Virus record (IMG/VR): IMGVR_UViG_3300020154_000003
Location: 302,039 to 366,038 of that record
DNA: 64,000 nucleotides
Direction: 5' to 3' (one strand)
Shown: piece by piece, positions 80 through 63,586 of the stretch
Position numbering within the stretch: the first letter of the stretch is position 1
How the letters are laid out: each line of letters starts with the position of its first letter
Program-made: the position numbers and the translations under genes
Notes under the pieces: generated by a model
What the model saw: only the letters and a program-made list of their open reading frames with translations
The model's database searches: none
Told to the model about the DNA's origin: nothing

Positions 80-94
80 ATATTTTAAAAAGCA

Positions 95-659: not shown

Positions 660-671
660 TGTAATTATAAT

Positions 672-2186: not shown

Positions 2187-2189
2187 GCA

Positions 2190-2498: not shown

Positions 2499-2533
2499 AT
2501 TTTAGGTATGTTACAAAAGCAATAATAGTTAAA

Positions 2534-3148: not shown

Positions 3149-3154
3149 CCTTAA

Positions 3155-3358
3155 TTAATTACCGTTTAGCTTATCAATTTGCTTCTGCAACTCTTTAGGG
3201 TCGCTTAGGTAAAGCTTAATTAAGTCTTCGATCACGCCACCAATTTTTCTTTTGCTGCCCATACAATACTTTTTCATTCTCGCATGGAGTGCGCCATCAA
3301 TAATTACTGACTTAGATTTTTGATCGTCTTTCAGTGTGTTTTTTACTAATTCTTCCAT
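3155..3358 (-). CDS. Small ribbon-helix-helix DNA-binding protein
   Basis: KSVIIDGALHARMKKYC...IGGVIEDLIKLYL strand-helix-helix pattern. Confidence 0.6.
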   Translation of the reverse strand: MEELVKNTLKDDQKSKSVIIDGALHARMKKYCMGSKRKIGGVIEDLIKLYLSDPKELQKQIDKLNGN

Positions 3359-3441
3359 TTTTCATATTTATTACAATCAGATGATTTTATAATAAATACT
3401 AAAAATTTAGAAAAAAGAATAAAAATTTATAAGATTTTCTC

Positions 3442-4224: not shown

Positions 4225-4226
4225 AA

Positions 4227-8202: not shown

Positions 8203-11200
8203 TTATGATGTTATTGGGGTTCTCTCCCCTGAAAAGTTAATAAATAATTGTCCTGTTGGTTGATCGATAAATGTCCATGTCGTACCACCATCAGTAGTTC
8301 TAAAATATCCGTTATTGGACGTGCTCGGATCAATAATTAAATGACCAGATGCAACACCAATATTTTCATCAATGAAATAAAGTGCTGAATATGCACGACC
8401 AAGAGTATTAACTGCAGTCCACGTAGTACCACCATCTGTTGATCTAAGTATTTTTGCATCGTTTCCAGTATAACTCATTATCACGAAAACAATATTATCA
8501 TCAATAGCCCATACTTGATTAACACCAAATCCATCAGCAGGTAGATTAGCACTAATATCAGTCCACGTATCGCCACCATCAATTGATTTGTATAATACGT
8601 TATCTGTACTCGTGCTATGTGTAAAGTATGCAACATTATTAGATGGTGCGAACGAAAGAGCCTTAGGTTGGCCAACAGGAGTCGCCAATATTTTAGTCCA
8701 TGTTGTACCACCATTTGTGGTTTTATAAACGCCTTGATAACCACTATTAAACCCGTGATACCCTATTGCGTAACCAATATTTAAATCTTTAAAGTGTATA
8801 CCATTTACAGCCTGACTAACTGCCCCAATAACTAACTCAGATCGAGACCAAGTTACACCGCCATCTGTTGATTTTAAAAATCCGTTAGCCCCAACAGCAC
8901 ATAACACATTACTATTTAATGCTAACACAGCCTTAATACCACCACCATTATATCCTGCAGAATTTAATGCAGGTCTTCTACTAGTCCATGTAGCACCTCC
9001 ATCATTTGTTGTAATTATGTGAGGGAATGTTGCGTTTGAAGTAGATATGGTTGCACCCATAATACCAACTTGCCCAACAAAACTAACATGACTATATCCA
9101 ACACTATCAATTGTGGTTTGTGTGTTGACTGAAGTGAAGTTAAGTCCACTATCAATTGATCTATATGCTGATTCGTTAGTTGTGTACCCAAAATAATCTG
9201 CTGCCCAAAATGATGGTATAGAACCAGCAGGTATTGTTATGGCTTCATTAACTGAGAACGGTAAAGGAGCGTCAATTATAGCACCGCTATCTGATGCTGT
9301 TATGGTGTTAATGTTAAGTGTTAGTGAAGTAGATGCGTCATCACTACTATTAGGACTGTGTGCGCTCATAGTTATCTGAATTGTCAGAGAATCGCTGCTT
9401 AACATAGTGAAGGATGATGAATTGTTTTCAGTACCATCAGTCACTTCGTTCGAATATATCACACTGCCATTCTTTATAATTTCCACTAAATTGCTTGCAT
9501 CACTATCACCTTCTACCGTTGCAATTTGCCCCAAATCAAACCCTAACGTAAATATTGTTCCGTTAGATAAACTTGGGGTTATAGCAATTTCATATTCTAA
9601 GAATATGTCTGCATTACGATTTCCAGTAGTTGCACCGGAAGAGTATACTCTTTCAATTTCAGTCATAAAGAATTCATATTCATTAATAACATATTCTTGT
9701 TGAACACAAATAATATCATCCCACGCAAATGAAAATGTAGTATCCTGTACTCTTCTAACAAATTCACTACCGTCATTACCTAAATGGTTTAATGACTGGT
9801 CAAAACTAACTCCCCTTCTATATGGAAATTTTTGCTTAGTAAATGCTGTGTTTCTAACCAGTACACCACCTTTCTTTAGAATTATTGTGGCACTTAATAA
9901 TTGATCTATGAATCTATGGAAAAAGCTATTGAACTTATTGATAAATGGATAAACGTTAGTAAACGTATATCCATTACTACGTACTGTTGGATGATTGCTT
10001 CGCTTTAAATATTCTTCATACAACTTCTGAACTGTTGGATATAACCCACCTTCATGATCTGTCAGAGTTTTTCTATTTTTAACGTTAATTAATCGTCTAT
10101 TAATAAGTTCAAGGTATTCCAAGAAACTAATCTCGGACAAGTTAGGAAACTCAAAGTCGCCAAAATTAATACCAGTATCAGTACTACCATCAGCAGTAAT
10201 GTAGAAGACATTTATTAAATATCCTATGTTCAAAGCACTAGTATTGAATAAAATTTGTTTCCTATTGGATGAATTCAAAGTAAAATCTTTACCATTTTGA
10301 AGGGTAAGACCATTAATCACAACTTTAATAGCATCCACGTTAGGTGGCTCATAGTCCATAACATAGATGTATTTGTTGATACCACTATTGTAGAAAAATT
10401 TAGAGGTTGAAAAACTATCAATTCTATGACTTTCAGATTTTTTAAGTATCGGATCATTACCAGACGATTTGATGTAACTGATAACCACAACAGGATTTGC
10501 AATCAGGTAATTTTTCAAATCATTATTAACCACAATAATTTCACCAGAATTGATCACATAATCACCAGTATATAGCGAGTTACCTTTGGTTAATGTCATT
10601 CCATTTACCACTAATTGTACCTCACCCAATGGGTCTTCCAATAATGGGATAGACAATCCATCAGGATTGGCAGTAATTTTTGTAACCACGTAATCTACTT
10701 GATTATAAGTACCACCAGTAGATTTGTCGTTGAGATATGTTAATGTAATAACGTCTTTATGTCCATTCGTATAACTTTGTGCAGTCCCTCCTATCAAGAT
10801 AGCCTCTTTACTATCTAAAGGATTTATGTAATAATCAGCACTAGGATCAGTTGATCCTGAACCCTTGGTTAAAGTAAGACCATTAAAACTAACCTGTATA
10901 TCACCTTGAGGAACTTCTGGAATAGTAAATGAAGATGCAGAGGCACCATAAGTGAATGGTATATTAATGTAAAGATAAGGTTTAGTTACACCGCTAGTTG
11001 TAATTGGAAAATTGTGTTCAAGGTTGTAATTCCAAACATCAAATTCAATACCTCTTGAAATATCAAGAGTTATGTCAACTTCTTTAGTATTCAACACTAA
11101 ATTACTATCATTTTGATAATAGTTTGGTGTCGTGTAATGTCTTCTTTCAGTAGTACCTGATTGTACCCACGACTTTTTGTTGTCAACTTTTCTATTCAAT

Positions 11201-40656: not shown

Positions 40657-43600
40657 TTAATTAGACTGCATATCAGGAGTGGTCACAACATCTAACCTAC
40701 CACCATTCATGCATATTGCAGTTATTATATCTTCTGAATGCGCTGGAGAACTACCATTTGTTGTTGGATTAGTAAGTACAGGAGTAGTTCCGAATGGGAA
40801 TCTATAACGACCACTAGCCCAAGTAAATGATTTGTTTGATGTATCCATTATAATCTTAAACATATACTGTTTACCAATTGTTTCACCAGTATAATTGAAC
40901 GATGTTACGTTACCAGTAACATTAAGTAAGAATATATCGGCAGTTGTAAGGTCTACTACAACATTTCCAGCAACACTACCGCTAAATACAACTAGAGTTG
41001 GTGTTATTTGACTGGTTATACCTGTCACATAATTCACATCAACCAACGAATGTTTGGTGAAACCAGTTGCATAATTACCTTTATATTCAATACCTGCTTT
41101 TATCGCTCTACCATCAGTAAATGTAGTACCTGTTTTAGTGATAATGAATCTAGCAAGTTCATCATCATCATTGTTTCTAAAAGTAACATCAAATCCGTAT
41201 GGTGAGAACAACACATCATTAGCAGTGCCATCATCTTCAATGATTTGTTGAAGTACTTGAGGTTGCTCATCTGGTTTATCGTATTGATTTGCATTACTTA
41301 CGTCTAAATGTGCATACCTACCGAAGTTATTCCCGTTGGCAGTCGCTTCAATACCTGAACTACGAACTTTAAATTCATTATATTTATCTGTCAAATCATC
41401 AAAGCTGATGGTCGTTCCATTAAAGTGTTTTACTTCAAAAGAAGTTGAACCCATCGTAAAACCATCATCATATTCAGTTGTTACCGAAAGAGCAGCATTA
41501 AAAGCACTGTTACCGAACGTAACTGTACTGCTATGACTCAAACTAGTTGAGTCTAACGAAGTATCACCACTCAATGAACCACCCAATATTATCACACCAT
41601 TATTGTCTGTCAAACCATTACCAACAAGAATGCTAGTACTACCACCAGTTAACGTGGAAGTTATGCCAGTTACATAAGCAACATCAGGTATTGATCTGGC
41701 AGTATATAATTCATGTAGATTTTCATTATACTCAATGACAGCATTTCGCATCACTAATTTACCAGCATCAAGTAATCCATTTTCGTCTAATCGGTAAAGT
41801 CCTGTATTTAATGTTTTGGGATCGTGGTATGTATATCCGTTTAATAATATCTTATTTTCAGGCAGTAATGAGACAAACCCACCAGTTAGACTTATACTAC
41901 CACCACCGTATCCTAATTTGAAATCATGGTTAATAGTACCATCGATATTCAAGTTTATTAAATTACCTCCTTGTCCATTTTCATCTGATAGATTATTACC
42001 ATTATATCTATTAAATGCTCCCGATGCTAAAATAGTACCGTTTGGCAACCAACATACTTTACTTACCTCAGTAGATGGTATATGAAATGTATATGTAAAA
42101 CCAGTACCCGGATCAAAACTACCCACATTAGTTCCACCACTAGTTATAAGCTTTAATCTAGGATTATTGAATCTGGCAATAATAACTTCACCAGTCTCTT
42201 GATTAACATCAAACCACATACCTCTTTCACCGTCAGAAAGAACATTAAAACCAGCAACTCTCGAACCGTCTGAATTTAATTTTGTAAAACCCGGAGAAAA
42301 CACACCATCATAATAATTATACGCACCGCAGGCATATATTGATCCACCAGACAATTGAAATACTCTCTCAACCCAACTATTGGCTGTTCCACCTGCGCCA
42401 CCCCATCTAAATCCACTACCATAAGTAAATCCTGTATCAACACCCCCATTCTCATTTAGACGAACAATACTCCATGCACTAGTCCCATCAAATTCTGTGA
42501 AAGTACCACCTACAAGAATCTTATCATCATCCTGTACGAAGATTGAATAAACAGAACCGTTAAAACCAGTACCGCCTGAGAAAGTAGCGTCATAACTACC
42601 ATCTGAATTCAATCTAGCTATTCTATTTACCGTATTTCCATCAATTTGAGTAAAATCTCCACCAATAATTATCTTACCATCTTGTTGCACATCGACAGCC
42701 CTTATTGTGTTATTAATGGAGGCAGGGTTAAAATCACCACTATTAGTACCATTTTCAATTAAGACTGTTATATATTTTTTAGTTAAATCGGTATTCCATG
42801 ATGTGAAATTACCTACAACAATCACTTTATATGCTCCATCACTCGGAAATTGTGGATCAATAACTTTAGTTTGAGAAACATAGCCAGAATTTCCACCTAG
42901 ACCAATATTAAATCCACTTTCAACATCGAAAAATAACCCCATTCCGTAATTTTGTAGCTGAAGTCTACTACTAGCGATATTAATTTCAGTATGTCCTTCA
43001 AGGGTTCCTCCGAGTCCAAAGTTTCCTGTACCACCTGTGTTCACTGTTCTAACCAATCCATTACTAGCGGTTTCACCTTGAGATATTACCCAAGCCTTAT
43101 CAACTAATGATCTATCAACATAATTTTCTGAATAATCAGCATCATAGATTGCAGCACTTCCACCGATAATGATTTGATCAATCACTGGAATAGTCCCAAT
43201 ATTTACTTCTCCATTACTTTTGAATCTAAAAACACCGGGATTGTTTAAATTAACATCTGTTGCGTATGTACCAGCATAAATAAAACCATCTGAATTTTCT
43301 ATAATAGTATACGAGTAAATCTGTGAATCCAGAGAGTCTCCAAAATTTAACTCATGTATACCATCAGCAGATAATTTACACAAATACTTAGTAGCCGTAC
43401 CGTTATAATTTTGAAAACTACCTGCAACAAGTATTTTATCACCTTCGGTGAGTTTCATTGCATTTATATCATTATCAAAACCAGTACCACTAGAGAAAGT
43501 AGTGTCATATGTGCCATCCTCATTAAGTCTATGAATACGACCTGTATGTCCTTCAAAAGTTGAGAACTCACCTCCTATGATCAATTTTCCTGATGACTGT

Positions 43601-44409
43601 TGTAAAATACCTCTAAAATAGCCTCCAGATGATCCTGTAACTATGTTTGCACTAAAAGTTGTATCTACGCTACCATCACTATTCAATCTAGCGATACCTA
43701 ATGCAGGTGTCGAATTAACTGCTTCAAAATAACCTCCAACAACAATTTTACCATCTTCTTGTATGCAAATAGCCGACACTTCACTATCAAAACCACTTCC
43801 AAGGTTGGTCATAAATGAGGTATCTTGAGTACCATCTGAATTCAGCTTAACAAAATGGCTACTAGAATTACCGTTAAAATCATCAAACCATCCACCAACA
43901 AATATTTCTCCGCTTTCAGACTTAGCTATACAGTTAGCATAATTACCCACACCACATGCAGTGCCAATAGCAGTGTTAAAATCAGTATCTAAAGTACCAT
44001 CAGCATTTAATCTAGTGAACCCATTTGTTGTTGTTCCATTAAATTCACTAAAGTAACCACCTATTAGTATTTTATCATCGTTTTGCATTGCAACACACAA
44101 ACCGTCACTGTCAAATCCAGTTCCCGTATTTGTTGTAAATGTGGCATCAAGTTCACCAGTCGCACTTACTTTTTGTATTCCGTAACCAGTCTCAACGCCA
44201 TTCCATGATGAATCTTCACTAGCCATTATTACACTACCATCCGCTTGAAGACCAAAACCATACGCAGTACTAAAATTAAGACCAGTACCGGGGACAAAGA
44301 ATGTCTCGCCTCTAAATGTAATTGTTGATGCTGATTTACCTATTGTTAGGTCATTTTCATGACCGTGATAAAATTTACTGTTATCTAGTAATTGTTTTGT
44401 TATTAACAT
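40657..44409 (-). CDS. Tail fibre/appendage protein with two delta-60-type beta-propellers
   Basis: Repeats of QxDGKI(L/V)(V/I)GGxF...RLNxDGxxDxxF; FTKHSLVDVNYVTGITS connector. Confidence 0.75.
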   Translation of the reverse strand: MLITKQLLDNSKFYHGHENDLTIGKSASTITFRGETFFVPGTGLNFSTAYGFGLQADGSVIMASEDSSWNGVETGYGIQKVSATGELDATFTTNTGTGFDSDGLCVAMQNDDKILIGGYFSEFNGTTTNGFTRLNADGTLDTDFNTAIGTACGVGNYANCIAKSESGEIFVGGWFDDFNGNSSSHFVKLNSDGTQDTSFMTNLGSGFDSEVSAICIQEDGKIVVGGYFEAVNSTPALGIARLNSDGSVDTTFSANIVTGSSGGYFRGILQQSSGKLIIGGEFSTFEGHTGRIHRLNEDGTYDTTFSSGTGFDNDINAMKLTEGDKILVAGSFQNYNGTATKYLCKLSADGIHELNFGDSLDSQIYSYTIIENSDGFIYAGTYATDVNLNNPGVFRFKSNGEVNIGTIPVIDQIIIGGSAAIYDADYSENYVDRSLVDKAWVISQGETASNGLVRTVNTGGTGNFGLGGTLEGHTEINIASSRLQLQNYGMGLFFDVESGFNIGLGGNSGYVSQTKVIDPQFPSDGAYKVIVVGNFTSWNTDLTKKYITVLIENGTNSGDFNPASINNTIRAVDVQQDGKIIIGGDFTQIDGNTVNRIARLNSDGSYDATFSGGTGFNGSVYSIFVQDDDKILVGGTFTEFDGTSAWSIVRLNENGGVDTGFTYGSGFRWGGAGGTANSWVERVFQLSGGSIYACGAYNYYDGVFSPGFTKLNSDGSRVAGFNVLSDGERGMWFDVNQETGEVIIARFNNPRLKLITSGGTNVGSFDPGTGFTYTFHIPSTEVSKVCWLPNGTILASGAFNRYNGNNLSDENGQGGNLINLNIDGTINHDFKLGYGGGSISLTGGFVSLLPENKILLNGYTYHDPKTLNTGLYRLDENGLLDAGKLVMRNAVIEYNENLHELYTARSIPDVAYVTGITSTLTGGSTSILVGNGLTDNNGVIILGGSLSGDTSLDSTSLSHSSTVTFGNSAFNAALSVTTEYDDGFTMGSTSFEVKHFNGTTISFDDLTDKYNEFKVRSSGIEATANGNNFGRYAHLDVSNANQYDKPDEQPQVLQQIIEDDGTANDVLFSPYGFDVTFRNNDDDELARFIITKTGTTFTDGRAIKAGIEYKGNYATGFTKHSLVDVNYVTGITSQITPTLVVFSGSVAGNVVVDLTTADIFLLNVTGNVTSFNYTGETIGKQYMFKIIMDTSNKSFTWASGRYRFPFGTTPVLTNPTTNGSSPAHSEDIITAICMNGGRLDVVTTPDMQSN

Positions 44410-47400
44410 TTTTTTATTTTATATAAATACTTAAATTATTATCCTAATATGGTGCCGCCCATCCAATTTATACCGTTATACACTAACATAATTGACGTAT
44501 AATTTGCGTTAATTATCGCTGTTGAACTTCCATTAATTAAATACCCATTACCATCAACAGTTATATTATTATCTAACGCACCACCTATTGCATCGCAAAT
44601 ATAAATCTGCTGTTTAAAAGTAGGCGATGGCGGTAAGTAAATAACTCCTGCGGTATCCCCAAAATAGTGAATGAAATGAGATGACGTTGACGCTGTAAAG
44701 GATGAGCCAGTTACAATCTCCAAACCAACTACATTTACTGCAATCCCTGATGTTATGCCAGTTACGTAGTTAACATCCACCAATGAATGTTTCGTAAAAC
44801 CTGACGATAGATCAGTAACATAACGGAACTTCTGTGTCGATAATAATTCAGGATGTACAACAAAATATTCTTCAAAATCAGAATAATTGCGCTTAAATAT
44901 TGGATTTTCCTGTACTCCACTATTGATATACATTAGAGTATCAAATACAAAAACCATATTATTAGGGTTGTTATCTGAACCTGTATGTTGATCAATATAA
45001 TTACCATTCAAATCTACCCTAACCATTTGAGATTTAGATGACATGAATATATGATAGTCTTCATTTACGAATACATTACTATATGTACCAATACTTGGTA
45101 CTTGAGCAACGTTCGTATTGAATTCTTCATCGAATACTCCTGTCGCATCAACAACCATAAGGCCAGTATTCACCGATGAACTTCCATATGTTGAAAATGA
45201 ACCTGATAGTAAAAATCTATCAGTACTATCCAATTTTATAATTGAAGAAACTTGTCCATCAAATATTTCAGGAATAAATGTTTCACTTATTGTCCCATCT
45301 GTATTTAAAGCAACTATATAAGGAGTGCTTAACGTATTTCCACTATACTCAGTAAAAGCCCCAACAACTATAAGAGTATCATCATTTAATACCGCAAAAT
45401 CATATGGAGTGTCATTAAATCCAGCACCAGTATCAAAAGTATTATCTAAAGTACCATCTGTGTTTACTCTTCTTATATAAGTCACACCACTTACGGATTC
45501 AGTTATTCTTATGTAAAGTTTACCATCACTCAAACCTAACACTTTACCCACATTATGGATAGATTCACCACTTAAATAAAACGTAAAACCAGTATCAACA
45601 GTACCATCATGTAATAATTTAACAAGACAAGTACATTGGAAGCTATTAAAACTGTTAAATACACCATACACATAAATGTTTTCATCGTCATCAACAAAAA
45701 TACCTGAAATATTATTCGATGGGCCTGAACCAATATTGCTTGAGAAATTTTCATTTATAACTCCATCACCACTTAATAATGCTATACCACTTGAATTAAT
45801 ATCGTTAACGTCAGTAAATGCACCTGAGATCAAAAGATCACCTGTTGAGGGTATTCTTGCCATCCTATTGATACTTGCATTGACAGAAATATAATTGAAC
45901 TGGTTTAGTTTTTCATATGATGTTGAAATAGTCTTTGACGTTTCAGAATAATCACGGAAATTTAAATGGAAACCATCATTAACTTTATCTAAAGTTAACG
46001 TAACTACATCACCAGAAATGGCTGTTTGACCTGTCAATTCACCACCCAAAACCACCGTGTCAAGAGCACGTTTAACGCCATTATCTGCCAGATTAAGTAA
46101 GTTGCTCGTTAAACCAGTTACATAGTTAACATCGGCAATACTATGTTTTGTAAATCCTGACGAATAATCAGAATTATAGTTCATTTTATCATTTAGAGTA
46201 ATATTTTCTAAAGGAAAATCTGCTTCAAGACCAGTATCTGAAAGTAATGCCAAGTTAATACACGAATTTCCTTGATATGTCGTAAATGCCCCTCCAACTA
46301 GATATTGAACTGGTGAAGAATCCACTTTTTCAATTACTTTTGGCCCTCCACTAAAACCAAACGCAGCATTGAAGCCAGTACCAATATTAAATGTATTATC
46401 ACGAGTACCATTACTATTCAAACGAACAATTCTATTTGTTGTTGTTCCTGATAAAATAGTAAATCTACCAACTGCAATAATTTTAGTACTATCTACTAAC
46501 ACATCATGTACTGTATGAATAACACTGCTACTAAAACCAGCATCCATATCAAAGGTATTGTCAACACTACCATCAGTATTTAAGCGAATTAATTTATTAT
46601 AACCAGTAACCCCGCTATATGAAGAAAAACTACCACCCACCAAAATTTTATCATCTGGTTGAATTTCAATCACAAATACTGTGCTATTAAAACCAGCACC
46701 AGCATCAAATGTATTATCAACACTACCATCAGTATTTAAGCGAATTATTCTATTGAATCCAGTAACACCACTGTATGAAGTAAAATTACCACCAACCAAA
46801 ATTTTATCATCAGATTGAATCTTAATTGTATTCACTGTACCATTAAAACCAACACCGACATCAAATGTGTCATCAATACTCCCATCATTATTTAATCTAA
46901 CAATACGATTAGATGTGACTCCATCATAACTAGTAAAATCACCACCAACCAGAACTTTACTGCCGACAACTAATTCATCTACTTCAATAATATTCACATC
47001 ACCATTAAAACCATCACCAACAATGAAGGTATTATCGAATGCAAGACTAGAATCGTTTAATCTTAGTATTCTATTTTGCGTTGAGGCATTAAATGTTGTT
47101 GAGAATCCACCACCAACATAAAGACCATCAGTAGTCCTCGCCAATGTTTTTATATTTGATATATTTACCGATCTTTCAAGATTATATTGTGTATCATACT
47201 TTAAAAGTGTTATGTCGTTTCCAACATAGATGGCCGCACCGTATGATAATATTGCTAATACTTCACCGCTACTATAAAATTTACTATTTAATTGAATTCC
47301 CTTACTATATGAGTTCCAAAGATTGAATTGGGATGACTTCTGTGTAAAAATACCATCACTAGCTATAGTTGTCGATTCGGTTAACTCCCCACCAATTTTA

Positions 47401-50400
47401 ATAACTCCATCACTGCTTTTTGTAATACCATTCTCACCTTGAATATAATTATCTACATACGATTTTGGTGTTAAATAAGAATCTCGTAATCTAGTTGCAT
47501 CATAAGTTCCATCATATGCTATAAAACTATTTTTAGCAATAATATTTGCCTCACCAGTTAGCAATTCACCTTCGGTGGAAATTTTAATAAATCTATTTAT
47601 ATCATTTCCGTTATAGCTAGTGAAATCTCCACCAGCATAAACACTACTTCCACTACTTTGGACGACCCACACATAACTATTAATTCCACCTTTAATGTTG
47701 AATAACTCATCAATAGTACCATCAGAATTTAATAAAACAATATCACTAAATGGAATTGAGTTATACGTATCAAAATCACCACCAAGCAGAATTTTACCGT
47801 CATCCCTAATCTTTACTGAGTTAACTGTTGATGTTCCCCCTTCTATTCCACTACCAATTTCAAAAGTATTGTCAACACTACCATCACTATTTAATCGAAT
47901 TACACTATTTGCAGAAACACCATTAAATCCAGTAAAAAGACCTGCTAACACTATTTTACCATCACTCTGTAGTCCCATTTTGAGAGCATATTCACTACCA
48001 ACAGCGAAGCCAGTTCCTACGTTGAATGTTTCATCAATGCCACCGTTAGAATTTAATCTTATTAACGAATTAGCGGTGACACCACTATATGTTGAATATA
48101 AACCAGCCACAACTATTTTACCGTCATCTTGTATCAAGATGTCAGAAACAAACGCATCAAACCCTGATCCAGTAACAAAGCTATCATCTAAACCACCATT
48201 ACTATTTAATCGAACAATCCTACCCACAGTAATTCCACTATAAGCAGTGAAATCACCACTCACAACTATTTTACCGTCATCTTGAATGGCCAAACCATTA
48301 TATATCGCCCCATCGAAACCACTACCCACTTCGAACGAATCATCAATAGTACCATTTGAATTTAATCTCACTATTCTATTAACTGATTGAGAATTGAAAG
48401 TAGTAAACTCCCCAACCAGCACTATTTTATTATCTGATTGTATCGCTATTCGTTGAACATATCCACTAGCACCAGCACCAATATTATTGTTAAAATCTTC
48501 ATCCAAAGAACCATCACTATTTAATTTAGCTAACCCACCAACAACAACTCCATCATATGCTTCGAAATCACCCCCAATTAATAATGATCCATCAACAAAA
48601 TATTGTATGTCCCATACAGTTCCAGTAAATCCGCTTCCAATCCTAAAATCATAATTAGTAATATCAATACCAACATTTTTAAATGTAGTTGTATCACCAC
48701 TAAGTTTAGAAATATATGTTTGACCAGTTAAAATTAACTGATCGTTTGAACCTTGATAAAACTTATCTTTACTTAATTTTTGTTTTGTAGTAAACATTTT
48801 TTATAATATTTTTATATTTTAATTTTATGCGAACGATACAACTGTCCAATTCACTGTGTTATAAATTAAAGTTACTGCGCCGTAATTTGTGTTAATTAAT
48901 GCAGTGATCGATCCATTTATTGTTTTTCCATTACCATTTATTGTGATGTTTGCCGTTAACGCATTGCCTTTTATGTCCGCAATAATTATTTTTTGATATG
49001 GTGTTGGCGCTAAAGGTAAATACAGAGTAACTGCACTTTCTCCTGAGATTCCAATGAAATCTGTAGTGGTCGTTGCAGTGTATGAACCACCAGTTATATT
49101 AATACCATTAATTGTGGTTGACCCACCAGTAATTCCACTTACTGCAGATGAAATAGCACTATCAACATATTTTTTATTAGGTATCCATAAATCACCATGT
49201 CTTGAAACACCTGATACTGTGTAATCTGCGTAATAACGCATACCTGATTCGTGGGCATCCTTAATAACAGTTAAAGTATCTGTCATTTCTATACTGCTAA
49301 CGAATTTACTCTCACTATTTATGTATCTTAGAGATGCAAGTGCGTTATTTGCTTGTAAACCATTTACTATATCAGTACCATTAGTTGACCCAACAATAAC
49401 TTGATGTTGATTAAATTGTGCAATTGAATAATTAGGACTAGATGCTGTTTTTAATACTAATGCATTTGCTCCTGAATCTATTGTTGTAAGACCACTTAAT
49501 GTTGTTGTTCCACTAGTTTTCCAAAAACTACCACCAACTAATGTTGATGTAATGCCAGTTACATAATTAACGTCAACTATAGAATGTTTACTGAAATTTG
49601 ATGAATAATCACCTCCATAAGTTAAACCTGATGAATTAAAGGTTACTGTTTTTGGTGACCCATCATAATCTTGGGTAAATACGATATTTCCTACCGAACC
49701 CATATATATTGTGTTGCTAGAAGCAATTGGTCTATAACCAGTTGTCGTACCTACGCCACTAGGGTTACCAATAACCATAACGTTATCGACCAGTAATGTC
49801 GATAAATGAAGACCAGTACTTGGGCCAATAAAAGTATTACCATTACCTGTAATCGTTGCTGTCATGAAACCACCATAAGGGCCAATACCCATGTTGTGAT
49901 GTCCACGAATTCTTGGAAGAGACCAAGAGCCGTATCCCGTATTCTTTTGACCTATTACAACCCCTTGTCCAGCCTCACAACCAACATAAGTGCCCTTTTC
50001 TGATGGCCCACTACCTTCCATTGCGTGAACACCAACAGCTACGTTGAATTGGTTGCTTCCTGTTCCGATAGCACCCGGAGAACCACCTTGTGAACCCCAC
50101 AATGCTCTTTCTCCAATACCAATATTTCCACGTCCAAGAGATGCTTCCTGACCAGCACCACCAATCAAGACTTCGTAATCTTCAAGCATGGTTGCATTCA
50201 TACCTGCACCATAACCAAGTAAAACAGTTCCATATCCATCTCTAAAAACAGCGTCTTTACCTGTATAACCACCTACTGCGGTTATATATCCATATGAGCC
50301 AGTGGCACCTGAAAGAAAATCTGCACCACTTAATGCATATGTACCTATTGCAACAGTGCTTTCCCATGTTGTTGCATCACCAGTAATTCCTGCAGAAGCT

Positions 50401-57632: not shown

Positions 57633-59771
57633 TTACATCAACTGTGCAGCTTTGTCGTAGCTGGTTATAAAGTCTTCATACTTGAATTGAGTAGTGCTAC
57701 CATCAGGTGAAGATACCGCCACGCCTCTACTTCTAGCATGTAAACATGCAAGATCGTACACGGATAATTTGTCTTTGGTGATCAACGATCTCAGAATTTG
57801 TGAAGTCTGACCTCTACTGTTCTCCAGAGTAGCAAGACTTCCTGATTCCAGTTCCAAATCAGCCCAAATGTATTCTTTCATCAACAAATCGATGATACAG
57901 ATAACCACTGTCGAACTCTCATTAGCCAATGTCATGGCATTACTGATCGTTTTAGGAACGAAAAGAGGGTTCGATTCAGGATATTCTCTTTCCATCAGAC
58001 CAAACACGCAATCCTTCATGGTATGCATAGGTCTGCTTTGGAAATTATGTACTTGAACCACAGCATATCTCGCACCAGCATCATTACATGCGTTCACGTC
58101 AATATCAACGTATTCAGCACAAGCACCTTGTCTATGTCTTACGTCACCTGAGTGGCAAGAATTCAACGCAGCACTTTGCAAACGAGTAAATGATATATGA
58201 TCAACATTTTTCAAATCATTTGCATGAAATGAAACACTCAAATCCAAATCTTCGTAACCCTGTTCATCAAACCAATGGATGTAAGGTCTGATAACTTTTG
58301 CAGACTCAGCAAAAGGAATTCTTGTTCCTCTCACGTAAGTTTTAACAGAAGTATTGATACTTCTCATTGCCGATGGCAATGGAATGTTTTTCAACCTTTC
58401 ATCAATCCAGACACTACCCAACGGTTCAAGGTTACCAAACTGATCGGAGATACAGTTCAAAATAACTCTCTGAATTAAGGAAATTAACTCAGCATTTATC
58501 GGAGGTAGTGGCTCCAACTGCTTTTTGATTGATCTCTTACCTTTGATCATCACGCTTCTCGGAACATTTACTGTTGCTCTGTTTAAGAAATGGTTATATA
58601 GTTCCCACAAAACCTTTCTACTCACTTTAGGAGCGATTTTTTGAAATGTTTCCAGTACTGGAACAGCATCAAAGTTTCTCAACATCCAGTCAAGCCTTCT
58701 AGCATATTCTCCGGGTCTTTGGGATAGAACAGCCATACCTTTCAATTGACTTTCCTTAAAAGCAGCCTCAACTAAACCATTGAAGGTCTTAATTTCCTTT
58801 GCAGCGTTTCTCAACACATCGAAGGCAGATGCAGTTCTAGGAAACTGTTTTGCATATTCGGATGGGTGAAGAATTTCACCGAGTCTCAACCATCTTCCGA
58901 TTTTGAGTTTCATTTCACCCAAGTCGAGATTGGTTTTTTCAAGTAACCCAAGAAGATACTTTCTTTCACTTCTTGAAAATTTCTTGAACTTAAAACGTTC
59001 TCTTGCAGCTTCTTGAAACGCTTTGATATTGTTAAAAAACCATTTTTTTCTACCGTCTTTAACCTCACCGATAGTGACTTTTGGAACAGCAGGCAATGAA
59101 ATATCACCACCTGAAAGGTGTGTAGCGATTCTCAACACATCGGTTGCTGTTTTAACAGGTACGTTTAAACCATGACCAGCAAGCAAGCACAATGTTTCCT
59201 TGAAAGGAACCGTTGATGGCATAACCAAAGAATCACGCTGATTCAATATAAACCATTCAACTACAGCTTTATCGTTTTCAGTGATTGACTGATTGATAGA
59301 TACAAGTCTTGTGAAGATATTCGCAAACCCTTCTTCAGTACCAAGCTGGATAAGTGAAAACTCAGTGTTTTCAAACTTAATACCTCTGTCAAGTAATTCT
59401 TGATCAGGTTCCCATTTACCTTCAGACCAGTAATGTTTAACAGCCATTCTGAACAAGCCTATAAGACTTGTTTCCATGACTTGCTTAGGAAAATTCTTAA
59501 AAAGAGGGGAATAGTTGCCAACACCTAATTTCTTTTGAAGATGGGCAACAGCTTCGATATACCAATCGATGGAAACTACTTCCAAAGCTTCGGGGGATAG
59601 GATGTACCCCAATTGCATTAACTCAGCTTGGATTGTGTCAGCCACCGCAGACGAAACTGAACCGTCAGAAGTCGGAATCATCATCCCTCTTTGGAGGGCA
59701 ATGATATTTTTGGTTAAAGAACTTTCATTAGTTCTAACTTTAACGGCAGCGTTCGCAGTAGATGTACTCAT
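57633..59771 (-). CDS. Large alpha-helical protein with C-terminal TerD-like domain
   Basis: C-terminal DLDLSV...HSGDV...AEYVDID...RYAVVQVHNF TerD pattern; helical N-terminal region of about 480 aa. Confidence 0.7.
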   Translation of the reverse strand: MSTSTANAAVKVRTNESSLTKNIIALQRGMMIPTSDGSVSSAVADTIQAELMQLGYILSPEALEVVSIDWYIEAVAHLQKKLGVGNYSPLFKNFPKQVMETSLIGLFRMAVKHYWSEGKWEPDQELLDRGIKFENTEFSLIQLGTEEGFANIFTRLVSINQSITENDKAVVEWFILNQRDSLVMPSTVPFKETLCLLAGHGLNVPVKTATDVLRIATHLSGGDISLPAVPKVTIGEVKDGRKKWFFNNIKAFQEAARERFKFKKFSRSERKYLLGLLEKTNLDLGEMKLKIGRWLRLGEILHPSEYAKQFPRTASAFDVLRNAAKEIKTFNGLVEAAFKESQLKGMAVLSQRPGEYARRLDWMLRNFDAVPVLETFQKIAPKVSRKVLWELYNHFLNRATVNVPRSVMIKGKRSIKKQLEPLPPINAELISLIQRVILNCISDQFGNLEPLGSVWIDERLKNIPLPSAMRSINTSVKTYVRGTRIPFAESAKVIRPYIHWFDEQGYEDLDLSVSFHANDLKNVDHISFTRLQSAALNSCHSGDVRHRQGACAEYVDIDVNACNDAGARYAVVQVHNFQSRPMHTMKDCVFGLMEREYPESNPLFVPKTISNAMTLANESSTVVICIIDLLMKEYIWADLELESGSLATLENSRGQTSQILRSLITKDKLSVYDLACLHARSRGVAVSSPDGSTTQFKYEDFITSYDKAAQLM

Positions 59772-59798
59772 AACAGGTATAAGGTTAAAATAAAAAAA

Positions 59799-59870
59799 CT
59801 CTGGTAATTAATTACAGTAATTGGTCAAACATGAATTGATTTTTAGAAGTAACCATATTTGTAGCCAGAG
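59799..59870 (-). ncRNA. Structured 72-nt RNA unit 3 (closed by CTCTGG/CCAGAG)
   Basis: Terminal inverted repeat; GGCTA-N6-TGGTTACTTCTAAA...AATTACTG-N10-CC; followed by T7. Confidence 0.65.
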
Positions 59871-59880
59871 TAAATTGTAA

Positions 59881-59953
59881 ATATAAGGAAATTTGAATCA
59901 GTAGTTGTTTATCCATTTGTAGTTTAGAAGTAACCAACCCGATAGCCTTATAT
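59881..59953 (-). ncRNA. Structured 73-nt RNA unit 2 (closed by ATATAAGG/CCTTATAT)
   Basis: Terminal inverted repeat; same motif spacing as unit 3; carries TTCAAAT, a T-loop-like heptamer. Confidence 0.65.
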
Positions 59954-59968
59954 TGTACCTTTGAAAAG

Positions 59969-60040
59969 TAGGGATTAAGGGATTTGCACCCATATCTGTG
60001 TTCGCAATGAACACCGTTCTAAAAGTTAAACTAAGCCCCT
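59969..60040 (-). ncRNA. Degenerate 72-nt tRNA-like RNA unit 1
   Basis: Cloverleaf AGGGGCT-TA-GTTT/GAAC-G-GTGTT CATTGCG AACAC-AGAT-ATGGG TGCAAAT CCCTT-AATCCCT-A; lacks D-loop GG, TTC, U33 and CCA. Confidence 0.7.
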
Positions 60041-60058
60041 ATTTTTCTTATGAGGTTG

Positions 60059-60089
60059 CAAATATAGTTAAAAGTAACTTATTGTCAAC
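60059..60089 (-). promoter_or_regulatory. Bacteroidetes-type housekeeping (early) promoter
   Basis: GTTG-N19-TATATTTG matches TTTG-N19-21-TAnnTTTG with one mismatch; also reads TTGACA-N16-TATATT. Confidence 0.7.
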
Positions 60090-60197
60090 CTCTTTTTGAT
60101 ATTTTTTTGTGGTTTTACCCTTATTTTTCGAAGGGTAAAGATAAATACGAATTTTAATGGAAAAAGTTATAGAATTTTATAACTTTTTCCTATTTTT

Positions 60198-61274
60198 TTA
60201 GAATTTGAACTCGCTAAAATCGTCATTGGACGAATCTTTATTGAGAGAACCCACAATATAACTTGAAATTTGCGTTTCTTGGGGTGCCACTTGCACATTC
60301 TTGTTCTCAATCCAGTCGTTAATCCACGTTATCGGATTGCTGGTTTTTTCGAAGATCGGATTCAGGCCGATGGTCTTCATTCTCTGATTAGTAAGAAACA
60401 TCATGTATTTCTTAAGAATTTCAGAGTTTAAACCCAACATACTTCCGTTGCTGAACAGGTAATCAGCCCATTGCATCTCTTCTTTTGCCGCATCTTCAAA
60501 CATTTTAACCACCAACGGCTCACATTCTTTCACAACTTCCGTAAATCCTTCAGTCGGCTCTTCTTTCAGTTTTTTCAACAAGAATTGTGTAAAGCCAAGG
60601 TGAAGATTTTCGTCACGACAGATCAACTTAATGATTTTCGCGTTACCTTCCATTTTCTTGTTTTCAGCAAAGCAGAAAGAACAGGCAAAACTTACGTAAA
60701 ATCTTATGCCTTCAAGAATGTTGATTGAATTCAACGTCAGGTACAATTTCTTTTTCTTCTCATGATCGTCTTCGTCCGAAAGGGCATTGATCATGTTGTC
60801 ATAATATTCAGTAACTGATGAGGTTCTTTTCAGTACTTCGTTATCGTTCAACACGTTATCAAATATTTCAGAAGGACTAGGATAGACATTCTTAATAATA
60901 TAAGTGTACGAGTACGAATGTAATTGTTCAAAGAACTCCCATGCTTTGGCAAACGCCTCTACTTCCGGGGACGAACAATTTTCAAGCAAGTTAGAGATAC
61001 CTCTGGACTGCACTGAGTCCAGAAGTATTTGGTAACTTAAGTTTTTCGTGAAAATGAACTTCTCGTTCTTTGATAATGTCTCAAAATCCGCTCTGTCCTT
61101 ACCAGCAATATCCACTTCCTCAGGTCGCCAGAAGAATCCTAGCTGCTTTTTGTAAAGTTCGAACAAATTCGAGTATCTGAATCTGTCATACCGTTGGATA
61201 TTCAAACCTTCGCCAAAAAACATTGGCTCTTTCGTAAAATCTACAGAGTTGTTGAGATTTATTATTTTTTTCAT
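60198..61274 (-). CDS. nrdB: Class Ia ribonucleotide reductase beta subunit
   Basis: FFWRPEEVD, LLDSVQSR, EQLHSYSY, LEGIRFYVSFAC, RDENLH, VAPQE; probable start MKKII at 61274. Confidence 0.95.
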   Translation of the reverse strand: MKKIINLNNSVDFTKEPMFFGEGLNIQRYDRFRYSNLFELYKKQLGFFWRPEEVDIAGKDRADFETLSKNEKFIFTKNLSYQILLDSVQSRGISNLLENCSSPEVEAFAKAWEFFEQLHSYSYTYIIKNVYPSPSEIFDNVLNDNEVLKRTSSVTEYYDNMINALSDEDDHEKKKKLYLTLNSINILEGIRFYVSFACSFCFAENKKMEGNAKIIKLICRDENLHLGFTQFLLKKLKEEPTEGFTEVVKECEPLVVKMFEDAAKEEMQWADYLFSNGSMLGLNSEILKKYMMFLTNQRMKTIGLNPIFEKTSNPITWINDWIENKNVQVAPQETQISSYIVGSLNKDSSNDDFSEFKF

Positions 61275-61288
61275 TTTATAAACTGTTT

Positions 61289-63586
61289 TTAAATTGAACA
61301 AGCACCACTTTCACATGAAGCGTCAGCAAAATTGGATGAGAAATCATCGGTAGACGCATCGTTAATGTTCGCATAATATAGAGTTTTAAGTCCCATTTTA
61401 TATGAATACATTATATCTTTTATAACCACGGACAAAGGTAATTCATTATTTGGATAATTACTATAGTCGTAGTAATGATTTGCACTAATTGATTGATCCA
61501 TCCACTTCTGCATTACAGCACAGATGTTAGTAATTCCACGGTTATCCCCCATTCCGAAAGCAAATTGGTATTTATTCTTCAATTTGCTAATGTCAGGCAC
61601 AACCTGTCTCAAAACCCCCTGTTTTGACACTTTAGCGACAATAAGTGAACGTACTGGCTCGATACCGTTCGTTGAATTGGTGGTTAAAGAACTGCTTTCA
61701 CAAGGCATTTGAGCACTTAGGGTTGAATTTCTCAATCCGTGCTGAAGAATGCTTGCTCTAAGCCCTTCCCAATCCAAAGAATACGATCTTTTCACTAAAT
61801 TATCGACTTCTCTATTATAAGTATCAATCGGAAGTATGCCTTTTGAGTATTTTGTTCTATCAAACCACTCACAAGCACCCTTTTCTTTCGCAAGTTCGTT
61901 GCTGGCCTTCAAAAGATAGTACTGGAAGTGCTCCATAAGTTCATCAATCAATGGCAATGCTGCCTTATCGGTATAAGATACGTCATTTTTCGCTAGGAAA
62001 TAGGCCAAATTTGTCAAACCAACGCCAATTGATCTTCTTTTCAACATTTTTGTTGCTGCCTTCACCGGATAATCTTGATTATCGATTACAAAATCCAGAC
62101 TTCTCACAATATTATCACAGATACCTTCCAATTCACTTAAATTTTTAAGTTCACCAACATTAATTGCAGACAATACACACAATGCTATCTCACCAGCATC
62201 ATCAATTGAGTTTTCAATGTGAGTAATCGGTGTTGTTGGTAAGGTAATTTCAACACAGAGATTTGACATCTTTATAGAATCTAAGAAAGAACTATGAATA
62301 TTTGCATGATCCATGTTCATAACATACATTCTACCAGTTTCAATTCTTTCCTGAGCGAAATTATTCATCACATCTTTTGCGGGAATTTTTTTCACAGATA
62401 TTTTTTTCTTCCCTTCATATTCTTCGTACAACTTTTCGAAGGCATCATTATCGCCTGATACGAATGCTTCATACAGATCAGGTACTTCACCCGGAGAAAA
62501 GAGTGTAATATCTTTTCCTTCAACGAATCTCTTATAGAATAAACGGTTGAATTGAATTCCATAATCCATTTTACGCACTCTGTTGTCATCAGTACCTTTG
62601 TTATTCTTCAATACTAGAATATCCAATATTTCCTTATGCCAGAACGGAAAAAATGTTGTTGATGCTCCACCTCTAATACCATTCTGAGTACATGATTTTG
62701 TGGTGGATTCAAATTTCTTTAAGAAAGGAATTACACCAGTATGAATTACTTCACCATTTCTAATCTTATCTCCAATCGCACGAATACGTCCGAAGTTCAA
62801 ACCAATACCAGCACGTTTCGATGTGTAATACATCACTGCTAAATCGCTGTGGCCAATACTATCCAACGAATCTCCAACATCAACTAGCGTACAGCTTGAA
62901 TACTGTCTGTTAGGGGTTCTAACTCCTGACATGATAGGTGTGGGCAACGAAATTTTAAAGTTGCTTATATCGTTGTAGAATGATCTAATTTTTTGAAGTC
63001 TACTCTCAGTCTCTTCAGCATACAAGGTCATCGCGATCAACATAAACATGAACTGTGGAGTCTCATACACTTTACCAGTCTTTCTATCTTTCAATAGATA
63101 CTTATCAATCAACTGTTGCAGACCAGCGTAAACGAATGTGAAATCTCTTTGATGTCTTAGATAAGAATTTAATTTTTCAAATTCTTCTTCAGTGTATTTT
63201 TCTAAAACTATTTTATCATATACTCCCACCTTCACATTTTTTTTCACAACCTCATAAAGAGATGGTAAGTTATCGCCAGCAGAATTAAAAACTTGTTTTC
63301 TCAATAAATAATTTTGAAGGTTCGCTGCAACGAATTGATAGTTGGGGGTTTCTTCCTTAATCAATGATGCTGCTGACTGAATCAATATTTTATGTATTTC
63401 CTCAGTTTTAATCCCGTTGAACAACTGCAGATTAGCATTCATCGCAATATCTGATGCAGAGACATTATTTATCCCCTCTGTTGCCCATATTAGGACTTTA
63501 TTAATTTTTTCATAATCAAGCTGAACTTTAGTGCCATCGCGCTTAATAATTTGTATGTTATCTGTTTCTACGTTATTTGAACCCAT
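61289..63586 (-). CDS. nrdA: Class Ia ribonucleotide reductase alpha subunit with ATP cone
   Basis: IIKRDG ATP cone, PTPIMSG, YSSC, SNLCVEI, LCVLSA, MPCESS, GLKTLYY, C-terminal CESGAC. Confidence 0.97.
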   Translation of the reverse strand: MGSNNVETDNIQIIKRDGTKVQLDYEKINKVLIWATEGINNVSASDIAMNANLQLFNGIKTEEIHKILIQSAASLIKEETPNYQFVAANLQNYLLRKQVFNSAGDNLPSLYEVVKKNVKVGVYDKIVLEKYTEEEFEKLNSYLRHQRDFTFVYAGLQQLIDKYLLKDRKTGKVYETPQFMFMLIAMTLYAEETESRLQKIRSFYNDISNFKISLPTPIMSGVRTPNRQYSSCTLVDVGDSLDSIGHSDLAVMYYTSKRAGIGLNFGRIRAIGDKIRNGEVIHTGVIPFLKKFESTTKSCTQNGIRGGASTTFFPFWHKEILDILVLKNNKGTDDNRVRKMDYGIQFNRLFYKRFVEGKDITLFSPGEVPDLYEAFVSGDNDAFEKLYEEYEGKKKISVKKIPAKDVMNNFAQERIETGRMYVMNMDHANIHSSFLDSIKMSNLCVEITLPTTPITHIENSIDDAGEIALCVLSAINVGELKNLSELEGICDNIVRSLDFVIDNQDYPVKAATKMLKRRSIGVGLTNLAYFLAKNDVSYTDKAALPLIDELMEHFQYYLLKASNELAKEKGACEWFDRTKYSKGILPIDTYNREVDNLVKRSYSLDWEGLRASILQHGLRNSTLSAQMPCESSSLTTNSTNGIEPVRSLIVAKVSKQGVLRQVVPDISKLKNKYQFAFGMGDNRGITNICAVMQKWMDQSISANHYYDYSNYPNNELPLSVVIKDIMYSYKMGLKTLYYANINDASTDDFSSNFADASCESGACSI

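What the first reader, a model, noticed from the sequence alone, without database searches (positions are those of the whole stretch)
59799..59953. Two sibling RNAs with identical motif spacing but different closing stems
Seen: both read stem-GGCTA-N6-TGGTTACTTCTAAA-N16/19-AAYTACTG-N10-CC-stem. The closing stems differ in sequence (CTCT/AGAG vs ATATAA/TTATAT) yet both pair perfectly, i.e. compensatory change within one locus. TGGTT can also pair downstream (TGGTTA/TGACCA; GTTGGTT/AACAAC), giving a Y-RNA-like rod. Inference: a protein-recognised ACTTCT loop on a conserved scaffold.
Basis: partly seen in the sequence, partly recalled or inferred. Interest (0 to 1): 0.78.

Follow-up and report, generated by a model that had tools for sequence, protein, structure and literature searches.

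The report
New small RNA family beside TerD-domain gene
The two look-alike ~70-base RNAs are real members of a previously uncatalogued, strongly structured RNA family that sits next to one particular protein gene (a TerD-domain protein with a possibly Ro60-like front half) in giant phages and many bacteria, so it probably forms a new RNA-protein particle comparable to Ro/Y-RNA.

Summary
On the minus strand lie two tandem ~72-nt elements, W1 (59954..59880) and W2 (59871..59798). They share the stated motifs and have different, perfectly paired closing stems.

They belong to a large RNA family. Its layout is P1 closing stem (ends GG/CC), internal loop 5'-CUA/3'-nUUU, a 10-bp P2, then an apical loop starting U(A/C)CUUCUA.

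- **Structure:** covariation is strong, with 90% of pairs kept in 51 phage copies and 96.7% in 70 bacterial copies. Slid controls give 32-52%.
- **Gene linkage:** the RNA is found only beside homologues of the downstream 712-aa gene, on the same strand. It occurs in 29 of 33 phage loci and 78 of 79 bacterial loci. In 61 sampled Paenibacillales genomes, 9 have both RNA and gene and 52 have neither.
- **Known families:** Rfam 15 has no matching family.
- **The protein:** it has a C-terminal TerD fold and a helical N-domain. The only long structural matches of that N-domain are four Ro60 structures, and they are weak (Z 5.8-7.0).
not supported; P2 replaces it.

Best reading: these are stable partner RNAs of this protein, by Ro/Y-RNA-like logic. 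They are co-transcribed with a tRNA-like element from one promoter. A cis-acting leader or attenuator remains a serious rival.

The parts
60061..60088 (-). Promoter-like site TTGACA-16-TATATT (11 of 12 matches). It also reads as TAtaTTTG, a Bacteroidota-style -7 box. It lies about 20 nt upstream of the tRNA-like element.
   Evidence: sequence.
59968..60040 (-). tRNA-like element, called tRNA-Gln(UUG) by ARAGORN. It has no G18G19 in the D-loop, a T-loop of UGCAAAU, A33 and C37. The 'anticodon arm' can be drawn as a plain 6-bp hairpin. It is probably a processing or structural module, not a decoding tRNA.
   Evidence: (36 bits). The alignment with relatives (A6) shows a UUCG tetraloop or another hairpin in place of the anticodon arm in L165, L166 and L168.
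59880..59954 (-). RNA W1. P1 is 59953-59946 with 59888-59881. CUA is 59945-59943. P2 is 59942-59933 with 59902-59893 (9 of 10 pairs, 4 of them G.U). The apical loop is 59932-59903 and begins UACUUCUA (59932-59925). The 3' internal-loop strand AUUU is 59892-59889.
   Evidence: (67.5 bits).
59798..59871 (-). RNA W2. P1 is 59871-59865 with 59804-59798. CUA is 59864-59862. P2 is 59861-59852 with 59818-59809 (8 of 10 pairs). The apical loop is 59851-59819 and begins UACUUCUA (59851-59844). The 3' internal-loop strand AUUA is 59808-59805.
   Evidence: (66.3 bits).
59792..59798 (-). Run of seven U immediately after W2's closing stem. It looks like a terminator or 3'-end signal and lies 20 nt before the start codon.
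   Evidence: Family-wide, T is enriched after the last copy of an array.
57633..59771 (-). 712-aa partner gene. The N-terminal part (about residues 18-478) is a helical domain. Residues about 480-660 have the TerD fold. It is related to NCBIfam NF041916 (RING_SCO0854) but lacks the RING and scores below that family's cutoff.
   Evidence: (phrog_33734).

Best explanation
**What it is.** W1 and W2 are two tandem genes of a conserved, structured small-RNA family. The family is functionally tied to the adjacent TerD-domain protein.

**Shown**
- The fold: a terminal stem P1, a conserved 3x4 internal loop (CUA / nUUU), a 10-bp P2, and an apical loop opening with the invariant U(A/C)CUUCUA.
- The exclusive, same-strand adjacency of this RNA to the protein family in jumbo phages and in several bacterial phyla.
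- In this window, a single strong promoter-like site, then a tRNA-like element, W1, W2, a U-run and the gene.

**Inferred**
- One promoter makes a polycistronic precursor.
- The tRNA-like element and the terminal stems direct processing into stable ~70-nt RNAs.
- These RNAs bind the encoded protein, probably through the conserved GG/CC-CUA/UUU region.
- They present the conserved pyrimidine loop to a third partner or target RNA. That is the logic of Ro60/Y-RNA particles.
- Read-through past the U-run yields the mRNA, so RNA and protein are made together.
For: **Structure**
- RNAalifold independently predicts P1 and P2.
- Covariation: A3 87.6% paired, 0 of 500 shuffles reach it. A5, 51 phage copies: 90% paired, with 10 of 10 P2 pairs and 4 of 6 P1 pairs covarying, against 32-45% in slid controls. 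A7, 70 bacterial copies: 96.7% paired, 13 of 16 pairs covarying.
- Invariant unpaired nucleotides are listed.

**Linkage to the gene**
- Model R1 hits 29 of 33 phage loci and 78 of 79 bacterial loci. All but one weak hit (E 0.39) are on the gene's strand.
- Whole-genome scans find copies only at the gene.
- In 61 Paenibacillales genomes, 9 have RNA and protein and 52 have neither, and every hit abuts a protein match.

**Arguments for separate RNA genes**
- Copy number is 1-4 at E<=0.001 (more with weaker hits), and arrays lie upstream (54 loci), downstream (7) or on both sides (2) of the gene.
- Arrays share loci with tRNA or tRNA-like genes.
- In L181 a YopX gene separates an array from the TerD gene.

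**Protein**
- TerD fold: Z 14.6.
- N-domain: the only matches longer than 240 residues are Ro60 of phage phiLo (Z 7.0), Xenopus (5.9), human (6.2) and Deinococcus (5.8). Foldseek gives probability 0.91 to D. radiodurans Ro60.

**Precedent**
- Y RNAs lie next to rsr and are made as polycistronic precursors with a tRNA (PMC4201824).
- A phage Ro60 has two Y-like RNAs upstream of its gene (PMC12135203).
Against: - There is no direct evidence of stable small RNAs or of protein binding.
- In Paenibacillus, RNA-seq contigs run continuously from the first RNA's 5' end into the coding sequence. In most bacterial loci the RNAs sit in what looks like a 5' leader, 10-70 nt before the start codon, often followed by a U-run. 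Both points fit a cis-regulator equally well.
- The Ro60 resemblance is weak. Z is below 8, the tool's own caution level for helical folds. hhalign against a TROVE profile gives 1% probability, and Pfam TROVE does not hit.
- The closest AlphaFold cluster is auto-named 'ZorC EH domain'. This lead is neither confirmed nor excluded.
Confidence: 0.55

Rival explanations
1. The RNA is a cis-acting leader or attenuator. It is a 5'-UTR element, in tandem copies, that controls transcription read-through or translation of the downstream TerD-family gene. Control would work either by binding the gene's own protein (autoregulation) or by binding a small ligand (riboswitch).
For: - 54 of 63 loci have the RNAs directly upstream on the same strand.
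- In Brevibacillus and Polycladospora a -10 box sits a few nt before P1, so the RNA starts the transcript.
- P1 is often followed by a U-run just before the start codon.
- RNA-seq contigs join the RNAs to the coding sequence.
- The CCUUCU loop is complementary to Shine-Dalgarno-like purine runs in Firmicutes.
Against: - Arrays lie downstream of the gene in 7 loci and on both sides in 2.
- Copy number varies, reaching 4 at E<=0.001 and more with weaker hits.
- An unrelated gene is interposed in L181.
- Arrays cluster with tRNA and tRNA-like genes.
- The motif is kept in phages whose start regions, including this window's, show no Shine-Dalgarno sequence.
- No alternative (antiterminator) pairing is conserved.
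Confidence: 0.3
2. They are true Y RNAs, that is, ligands of a Ro60/TROVE protein, misplaced or highly diverged.
For: - They have a terminal stem plus an internal loop.
- Two copies lie beside a protein whose N-domain weakly resembles Ro60.
- The polycistronic layout with a tRNA-like element parallels that in Deinococcus (PMC4201824).
Against: - The GNCGAA/GGUCCGA Ro-binding motif is absent (sequence; PMC4201824).
- No Rfam Y_RNA hit appears even at E<=10.
- No PF05731 TROVE gene is found in the phage genome.
- Bona fide Ro60 genes coexist elsewhere in 6 of the 9 Paenibacillales genomes that carry this system (one search compared with 123), so this is a separate system.
Confidence: 0.04
3. They are decayed or specialised tRNA derivatives, for example tRNA-Arg(UCU) anticodon-loop mimics. 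They would act as decoys for anticodon nucleases or as odd decoders.
For: - They are of tRNA size (about 72 nt) and follow a tRNA-like gene.
- CUUCUAA equals the tRNA-Arg(UCU) anticodon loop.
- In L177 the same string lies in an intron-containing tRNA-Arg(UCU) call.
Against: - ARAGORN and the Rfam tRNA model do not call them.
- The conserved fold is a two-helix rod, not a cloverleaf.
- The three bases after CUUC vary in close relatives (CUUCAAA, CUUCUAC, CUUCCGC).
- The motif is not closed by a 5-bp stem into a 7-nt loop.
Confidence: 0.05
4. They act only at the DNA level, as repeated operator or recombination sites.
For: Two direct repeats of a 14-mer lie upstream of a gene.
Against: - Base-pair covariation preserves RNA helices, including G.U pairs, which is strand-specific.
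- Nearly all model hits are on the gene's strand.
- The region is covered by RNA-seq contigs in Paenibacillus.
Confidence: 0.02

Closest known systems
Y RNAs with Ro60/Rsr (including bacterial YrlA/YrlB and phage phiLo Yrl1/Yrl2)
   Same: - Small RNAs (about 65-110 nt) whose 5' and 3' ends form a stem next to a conserved internal loop.
- One to several copies lie right beside the partner gene.
- They are co-transcribed with a tRNA or tRNA-like module.
- They occur in phages and bacteria.
- The partner protein has a helical N-domain whose only long structural matches are Ro60s, followed by a metal-binding beta-rich domain.
   Different: - There is no GNCGAA/GGUCCGA motif; the conserved strand is GG-CUA.
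- The tRNA-like module is a separate upstream element, not embedded in the RNA.
- The protein has a TerD domain instead of vWA and shows no sequence-level TROVE signal.
- True Ro60 genes coexist in some of the same genomes.
Tandem cis-regulatory leaders (tandem riboswitches, ribosomal-protein autoregulatory leaders)
   Same: - It sits in the 5' leader in most bacterial loci.
- It occurs in tandem copies.
- It is often followed by a U-run.
- It is strictly associated with one gene family.
   Different: - The position can be 3' of the gene or separated from it.
- Copy number varies widely.
- No expression-platform alternative pairing was found.
TerD-family proteins and NCBIfam NF041916 (MXAN_6230/SCO0854 RING-domain family)
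   Same: - The C-terminal domain has the TerD beta-sandwich (Z 14.6 to 2qz7).
- The whole protein matches NF041916 at E 7e-80.
   Different: - It scores 269 bits against a cutoff of 600.
- It has no RING finger.
- Pfam TerD is not detected by hmmscan.
- No RNA partner has been described for TerD proteins in the literature I could search.

Membership tests
New RNA family defined here (model R1) | P1 and P2 helices supported by covariation | tested here: met
   W1 has P1 9 of 9 and P2 9 of 10 paired. W2 has P1 7 of 7 and P2 8 of 10 paired.
New RNA family defined here (model R1) | Invariant GG/CC, CUA, U(A/C)CUUCUA and (n)UUU nucleotides | tested here: met
   One search gives the consensus. Both window copies carry all of them, except that W2 has AUUA instead of nUUU. 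Scores are 67.5 and 66.3 bits.
New RNA family defined here (model R1) | Adjacent, same-strand SCO0854-like TerD-domain gene | tested here: met
   In the window the gene starts 27 nt after W2.
Y RNA | Rfam Y_RNA / known covariance-model match | tested here: not met
   No Rfam 15 hit at gathering score, or at E<=10, over 59600-60250.
Y RNA | Ro-binding motif GNCGAAN0-1G / GGUCCGA in the 5' strand of the terminal stem (PMC4201824) | tested here: not met
   The 5' strand reads GGCUAU / GGCUAC, with no CGAA.
Y RNA | Neighbouring Ro60/TROVE protein | tested here: inconclusive
   PF05731 is absent from the genome and hhalign gives 1%. However, the neighbour's N-domain aligns over 248-269 residues to four Ro60 structures at Z 5.8-7.0.
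Y RNA | Physical binding to Ro60 | not testable with these tools
   This needs EMSA or RIP.
tRNA | Cloverleaf recognised by ARAGORN or Rfam RF00005 | tested here: not met
   Only 59968-60040 is called. W1 and W2 are not.
Riboswitch / cis leader | Constant position in the 5' UTR of the regulated gene | tested here: inconclusive
   54 loci have it upstream, 7 downstream and 2 on both sides.
Riboswitch / cis leader | Conserved expression platform (alternative pairing, terminator) | tested here: inconclusive
   A U-run follows the last copy in about half of arrays (34 of 72 have at least 6 T in the next 10 nt). No conserved antiterminator was identified.
NCBIfam NF041916 RING_SCO0854 (protein) | Score above the curated cutoff, and a RING domain | tested here: not met
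   269 bits against a cutoff of 600. The match covers residues 326-704 only.
TerD domain (protein) | TerD beta-sandwich fold | tested here: met
   VIA Z 14.6 and 13.7 to 2qz7 and 2kxt. Foldseek gives TerZ/TerD at E 4e-6 to 1e-4.

The most novel reading that the evidence does not exclude
The 712-aa protein is a previously unrecognised, highly diverged Ro60-type (TROVE-like ring) protein in which a TerD domain replaces the vWA domain. W1, W2 and their roughly 200 detected relatives are its dedicated 'Y-like' RNAs. Together they would define a second, widespread Ro-like ribonucleoprotein system in bacteria and jumbo phages.
Probability: 0.3. Interest if true: 0.9.

Novelty: new variant of a known kind. 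Interest (0 to 1): 0.78.

Why it matters
- TerD-domain proteins are widespread stress and phage-resistance factors with no known molecular mechanism.
- An RNA partner, co-occurring with the gene in all 61 sampled Paenibacillales genomes (9 with both, 52 with neither), would give a direct experimental handle on one branch of the family.
- It would add an RNA family to the catalogue that spans jumbo phages, Firmicutes, Acidobacteriota, Planctomycetota and others.
- If the Ro60 resemblance is real, it extends the Ro/Y-RNA paradigm to a second protein lineage. It would also show that giant phages carry such particles.

Tried and rejected
- **Rfam 15.** Gathering and E<=10 scans of the window and of 8 bacterial loci found nothing for these RNAs.
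- **blastn against the phage collection.** No match.
- **Exact 14-mer scan of viral contigs.** It returned only chance hits. The 16-base gapped motif gave 41 hits, of which one locus (L149) was a true relative and the rest lay in coding DNA.
- **Single-protein search for related loci.** Found nothing; the alignment-based search worked.
Rejected.
- **MFE folds of single sequences.** They disagree with each other and have modest z-scores of -0.7 to -2.4. Only comparative analysis resolved P2.
- **TROVE and RtcB in the phage genome.** Absent.
- **PADLOC.** No defence-system model hits the protein.
- **hhalign against a TROVE profile.** 1% probability.
- **PDB sequence search.** Nothing.
- **ZorC lead from AFDB naming.** Not corroborated by Pfam, PADLOC or PDB fold searches.
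- **Downstream neighbours.** The 308-aa downstream ORF is not homologous to the bacterial downstream neighbour. The 147-aa ORF that follows the arrays in some phages is absent from this genome.
- **Read laying.** Only assembled contigs were available, which gives no small-RNA resolution. Runs holding the phage itself are probably DNA.
- **Literature.** Searches linking TerD, SCO0854 or Prok-RING proteins to an RNA found nothing. Two Aravind-group papers that might discuss the protein family were not held.

Full report
**Setting.** The window is the last 64 kb of a 366-kb jumbo-phage record from a soil metagenome. The genome carries 54 tRNA genes. All genes near the finding run on the minus strand. 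The order is ribonucleotide reductase large and small subunits (61289-63586 and 60198-61301), an intergenic region of about 430 nt, then a 712-aa ORF (59771..57633).

**Observation.**
- Read on the minus strand, the intergenic region holds a strong promoter-like site, TTGACA-16-TATATT, at 60088..60061.
- Next comes a tRNA-like element at 60040..59968.
- Then come two ~72-nt elements, W1 (59954..59880) and W2 (59871..59798), followed by a run of seven U. The start codon lies 20 nt after that run.
- The shared 13-mer occurs only at these two places in the genome.

**Finding relatives.**
- Short exact-motif scans of the viral collection gave mostly chance hits. They did reveal a syntenic 371-kb phage, L149/G001. 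Its order is RNR small subunit, promoter, two tRNA-like elements, two sibling RNAs, then a 59%-identical homologue of the 712-aa gene.
- The protein has more than 1000 homologues.
- An alignment-based search fetched 33 phage loci and 79 bacterial loci. The bacterial loci come from Paenibacillus, Brevibacillus, Bacillus, Priestia and Cohnella, and from Acidobacteriota, Planctomycetota, a Puia (Bacteroidota) MAG and a deltaproteobacterial MAG.
- Inspecting the flanks showed the same element in many variants, for example GUUACUUC, GCUUCCUUC and UUAUUCCUUC.

**Structure.**
- An 11-sequence seed (A3) supports two helices. P1 is the closing stem and always ends in two G-C pairs. P2 is a 10-bp helix that pairs the segment just 5' of UACUUC with the segment beginning AC(U/C)G.
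- RNAalifold finds the same two helices on its own.
- Covariation is strong in three alignments.

| Alignment | Copies | Cells paired | Covarying pairs | Slid controls |
|---|---|---|---|---|
| A3 | 11 (seed) | 87.6% | 11 of 17 | 31-47% |
| A5 | 51 phage | 90% | 14 of 16 (all 10 P2 pairs, 4 of 6 P1 pairs) | 32-45% |
| A7 | 70 bacterial | 96.7% | 13 of 16 | 34-52% |

- The consensus is nnnnGG-CUA-[P2]-U(A/C)CUUCUA...variable 12-50 nt...-[P2']-nUUU-CCnnnn.
- Single-sequence MFE folds were uninformative.

**Association with the gene.**
- Model R1 hits 29 of 33 phage loci at E<=0.001 and 78 of 79 bacterial loci. Apart from one weak hit (E 0.39), every hit is on the gene's strand.
- In the loci analysed at E<=0.001 there are 1-4 copies, with more at weaker thresholds. 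Arrays lie upstream in 54 loci, downstream in 7 and on both sides in 2.
- Whole-genome scans find copies nowhere else. This holds for the phage genome and for three complete or large bacterial genomes.
- In 61 evenly sampled Paenibacillales genomes, the RNA and the protein occur in exactly the same 9 genomes. Each RNA hit abuts a protein match.
- Rfam 15 has no family matching the window or the bacterial copies. Literature searches found no description.

**The partner protein.**
- Pfam and PADLOC give nothing. PHROGs places it in phrog_33734, of unknown function.
- NCBIfam relates it to the MXAN_6230/SCO0854 RING family at E 7e-80, but below the cutoff and without the RING.
- AlphaFold models show a C-terminal TerD beta-sandwich, with VIA Z 14.6 and Foldseek E 4e-6.
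- The helical N-domain gave the following in a Foldseek-independent search of 48,161 chains. The top hit is Ro60 of Thermus phage phiLo (Z 7.0, 248 residues). Xenopus Ro60 (Z 5.9, 269 residues) and Deinococcus Ro60 (Z 5.8, 252 residues) are also in the top 11.
- Human Ro60 gives Z 6.2 over 268 residues.
- All other hits align only about 90-165 residues, most of them generic helical repeats.
- Foldseek against AFDB/Swiss-Prot gives D. radiodurans Ro60 a probability of 0.91.
- These Z-scores are below the tool's own caution level, and hhalign against a TROVE profile gives 1%. I therefore call the Ro60 likeness suggestive, not established.
- The best AFDB cluster (33% identity) bears the automatic name 'ZorC EH domain'. 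ZorC's core domain binds nucleic acid (PMC11946911). However, neither PADLOC, Pfam nor the PDB fold searches link our protein to ZorC.

**The upstream 'tRNA-Gln'.**
- It lacks G18G19, has a T-loop of UGCAAAU, and has A33 and C37.
- Its relatives in L165, L166 and L168 keep the odd D and T loops. They replace the anticodon arm with unrelated hairpins, two of them UUCG tetraloops.
- It is therefore a tRNA-like module.
- More distant phages have ordinary tRNA-Gln and tRNA-Ser at the same place.

**Expression.**
- Only assembled RNA-seq contigs were available.
- In Paenibacillus they run from the first RNA's 5' end into the coding sequence. The RNAs are therefore transcribed and at least partly co-transcribed with the gene.
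- Nothing can be said about processed small species.
- In Brevibacillus and Polycladospora a -10 box lies just before P1.

**Interpretation.**
- Several facts point to separate stable RNA genes that work with the protein: the exclusive linkage, the variable copy number, the variable side of the gene, the company of tRNA-like genes, and the conserved unpaired nucleotides.
- The layout parallels known Ro systems. Examples are Yrn2-tRNA-Yrn1 and rsr-yrlBA (PMC4201824) and phage phiLo Yrl1/Yrl2 (PMC12135203).
- I give this reading 0.55.
- A cis-acting leader or attenuator gets 0.3. It is favoured by the 5'-leader position in bacteria, the U-run, and the anti-Shine-Dalgarno-like loop.
- It is not a Y RNA by membership. 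The Ro-binding motif is missing, there is no Rfam hit, and there is no Pfam TROVE gene. True Ro60 genes also coexist in 6 of the 9 carrier genomes.

**Novelty.**
- The RNA family and its protein link appear undescribed.
- I rate the finding a new variant of a known kind, namely a protein-partnered structured small RNA of the Ro/Y type.
- There is roughly a 0.3 chance that it defines a second Ro-like RNP lineage.

Noticed in passing
G000:C1:123540-123613 and 125586-125659 (outside the window): The phage genome has 54 tRNA genes, including two with anticodon CUA (amber-reading; ARAGORN labels them Pyl). This suggests TAG suppression or recoding somewhere in the genome. ORFs in this window look intact under code 11.
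   Followed up: no
window 60159-60190: A 14-bp perfect palindrome (GGAAAAAGTTATA..TATAACTTTTTCC) flanked by T/A runs lies between the RNR small-subunit gene and the promoter. It is a likely bidirectional terminator.
   Followed up: no
L170, L172, L173, L174, L176, L177 (positions about 3590-4250 and 975-1400): In a related phage clade the RNA arrays lie downstream of the TerD-domain gene. They are followed by a conserved 147-aa ORF with no Pfam hit, which is absent from this genome. Two of them, L170 and L176, also carry a gene that looks SmpB-like by eye, and most carry true tRNA-Gln and tRNA-Ser upstream.
   Followed up: partly
L269:1799-1808; likewise L224 and L233, between the two RNA copies: In several Paenibacillus loci the spacer between copy 1 and copy 2 holds a Shine-Dalgarno-like AGAGAGGAGG. 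It is almost perfectly complementary to the invariant CCUUCCUUCU loop. This could be a regulatory pairing or a coincidence.
   Followed up: no
61 Paenibacillales genomes (G002, G007-G066): Canonical Ro60/TROVE genes occur in 10 of the 61 genomes, and 6 of these are among the 9 that carry the new RNA-protein pair. The two systems coexist rather than replace each other.
   Followed up: partly
L280 (Paenibacillus sp. SYP-B3998), positions 1-4613 and 9282-10652: The bacterial gene sits just downstream of a type I restriction-modification operon. It is followed by a SUKH (SMI1/KNR4) plus HEAT-repeat protein. This looks like a defence or conflict-island context.
   Followed up: no
AFDB cluster A0A5C5XM72, matched to protein residues 18-478: The closest AlphaFold cluster (E 3e-23, 33% identity, N-domain only) is automatically named 'Zorya protein ZorC EH domain-containing'. 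I could not corroborate a ZorC relationship.
   Followed up: partly
G000:C1:181454-181518: A weak third match to the RNA model (16.4 bits, E 0.25) lies elsewhere in the phage genome. It is probably chance.
   Followed up: no
window 8203-56525: A run of very large minus-strand ORFs (1184-1538 aa). The four I scanned have no Pfam or only unknown PHROG matches, and phrog_5490 hits two adjacent ORFs (40657-44409 and 44439-48797).
   Followed up: no
L211 (Bacillus toyonensis): This is the only one of the 79 bacterial loci without an RNA hit. Sequence that looks coding runs right up to the start codon.
   Followed up: no
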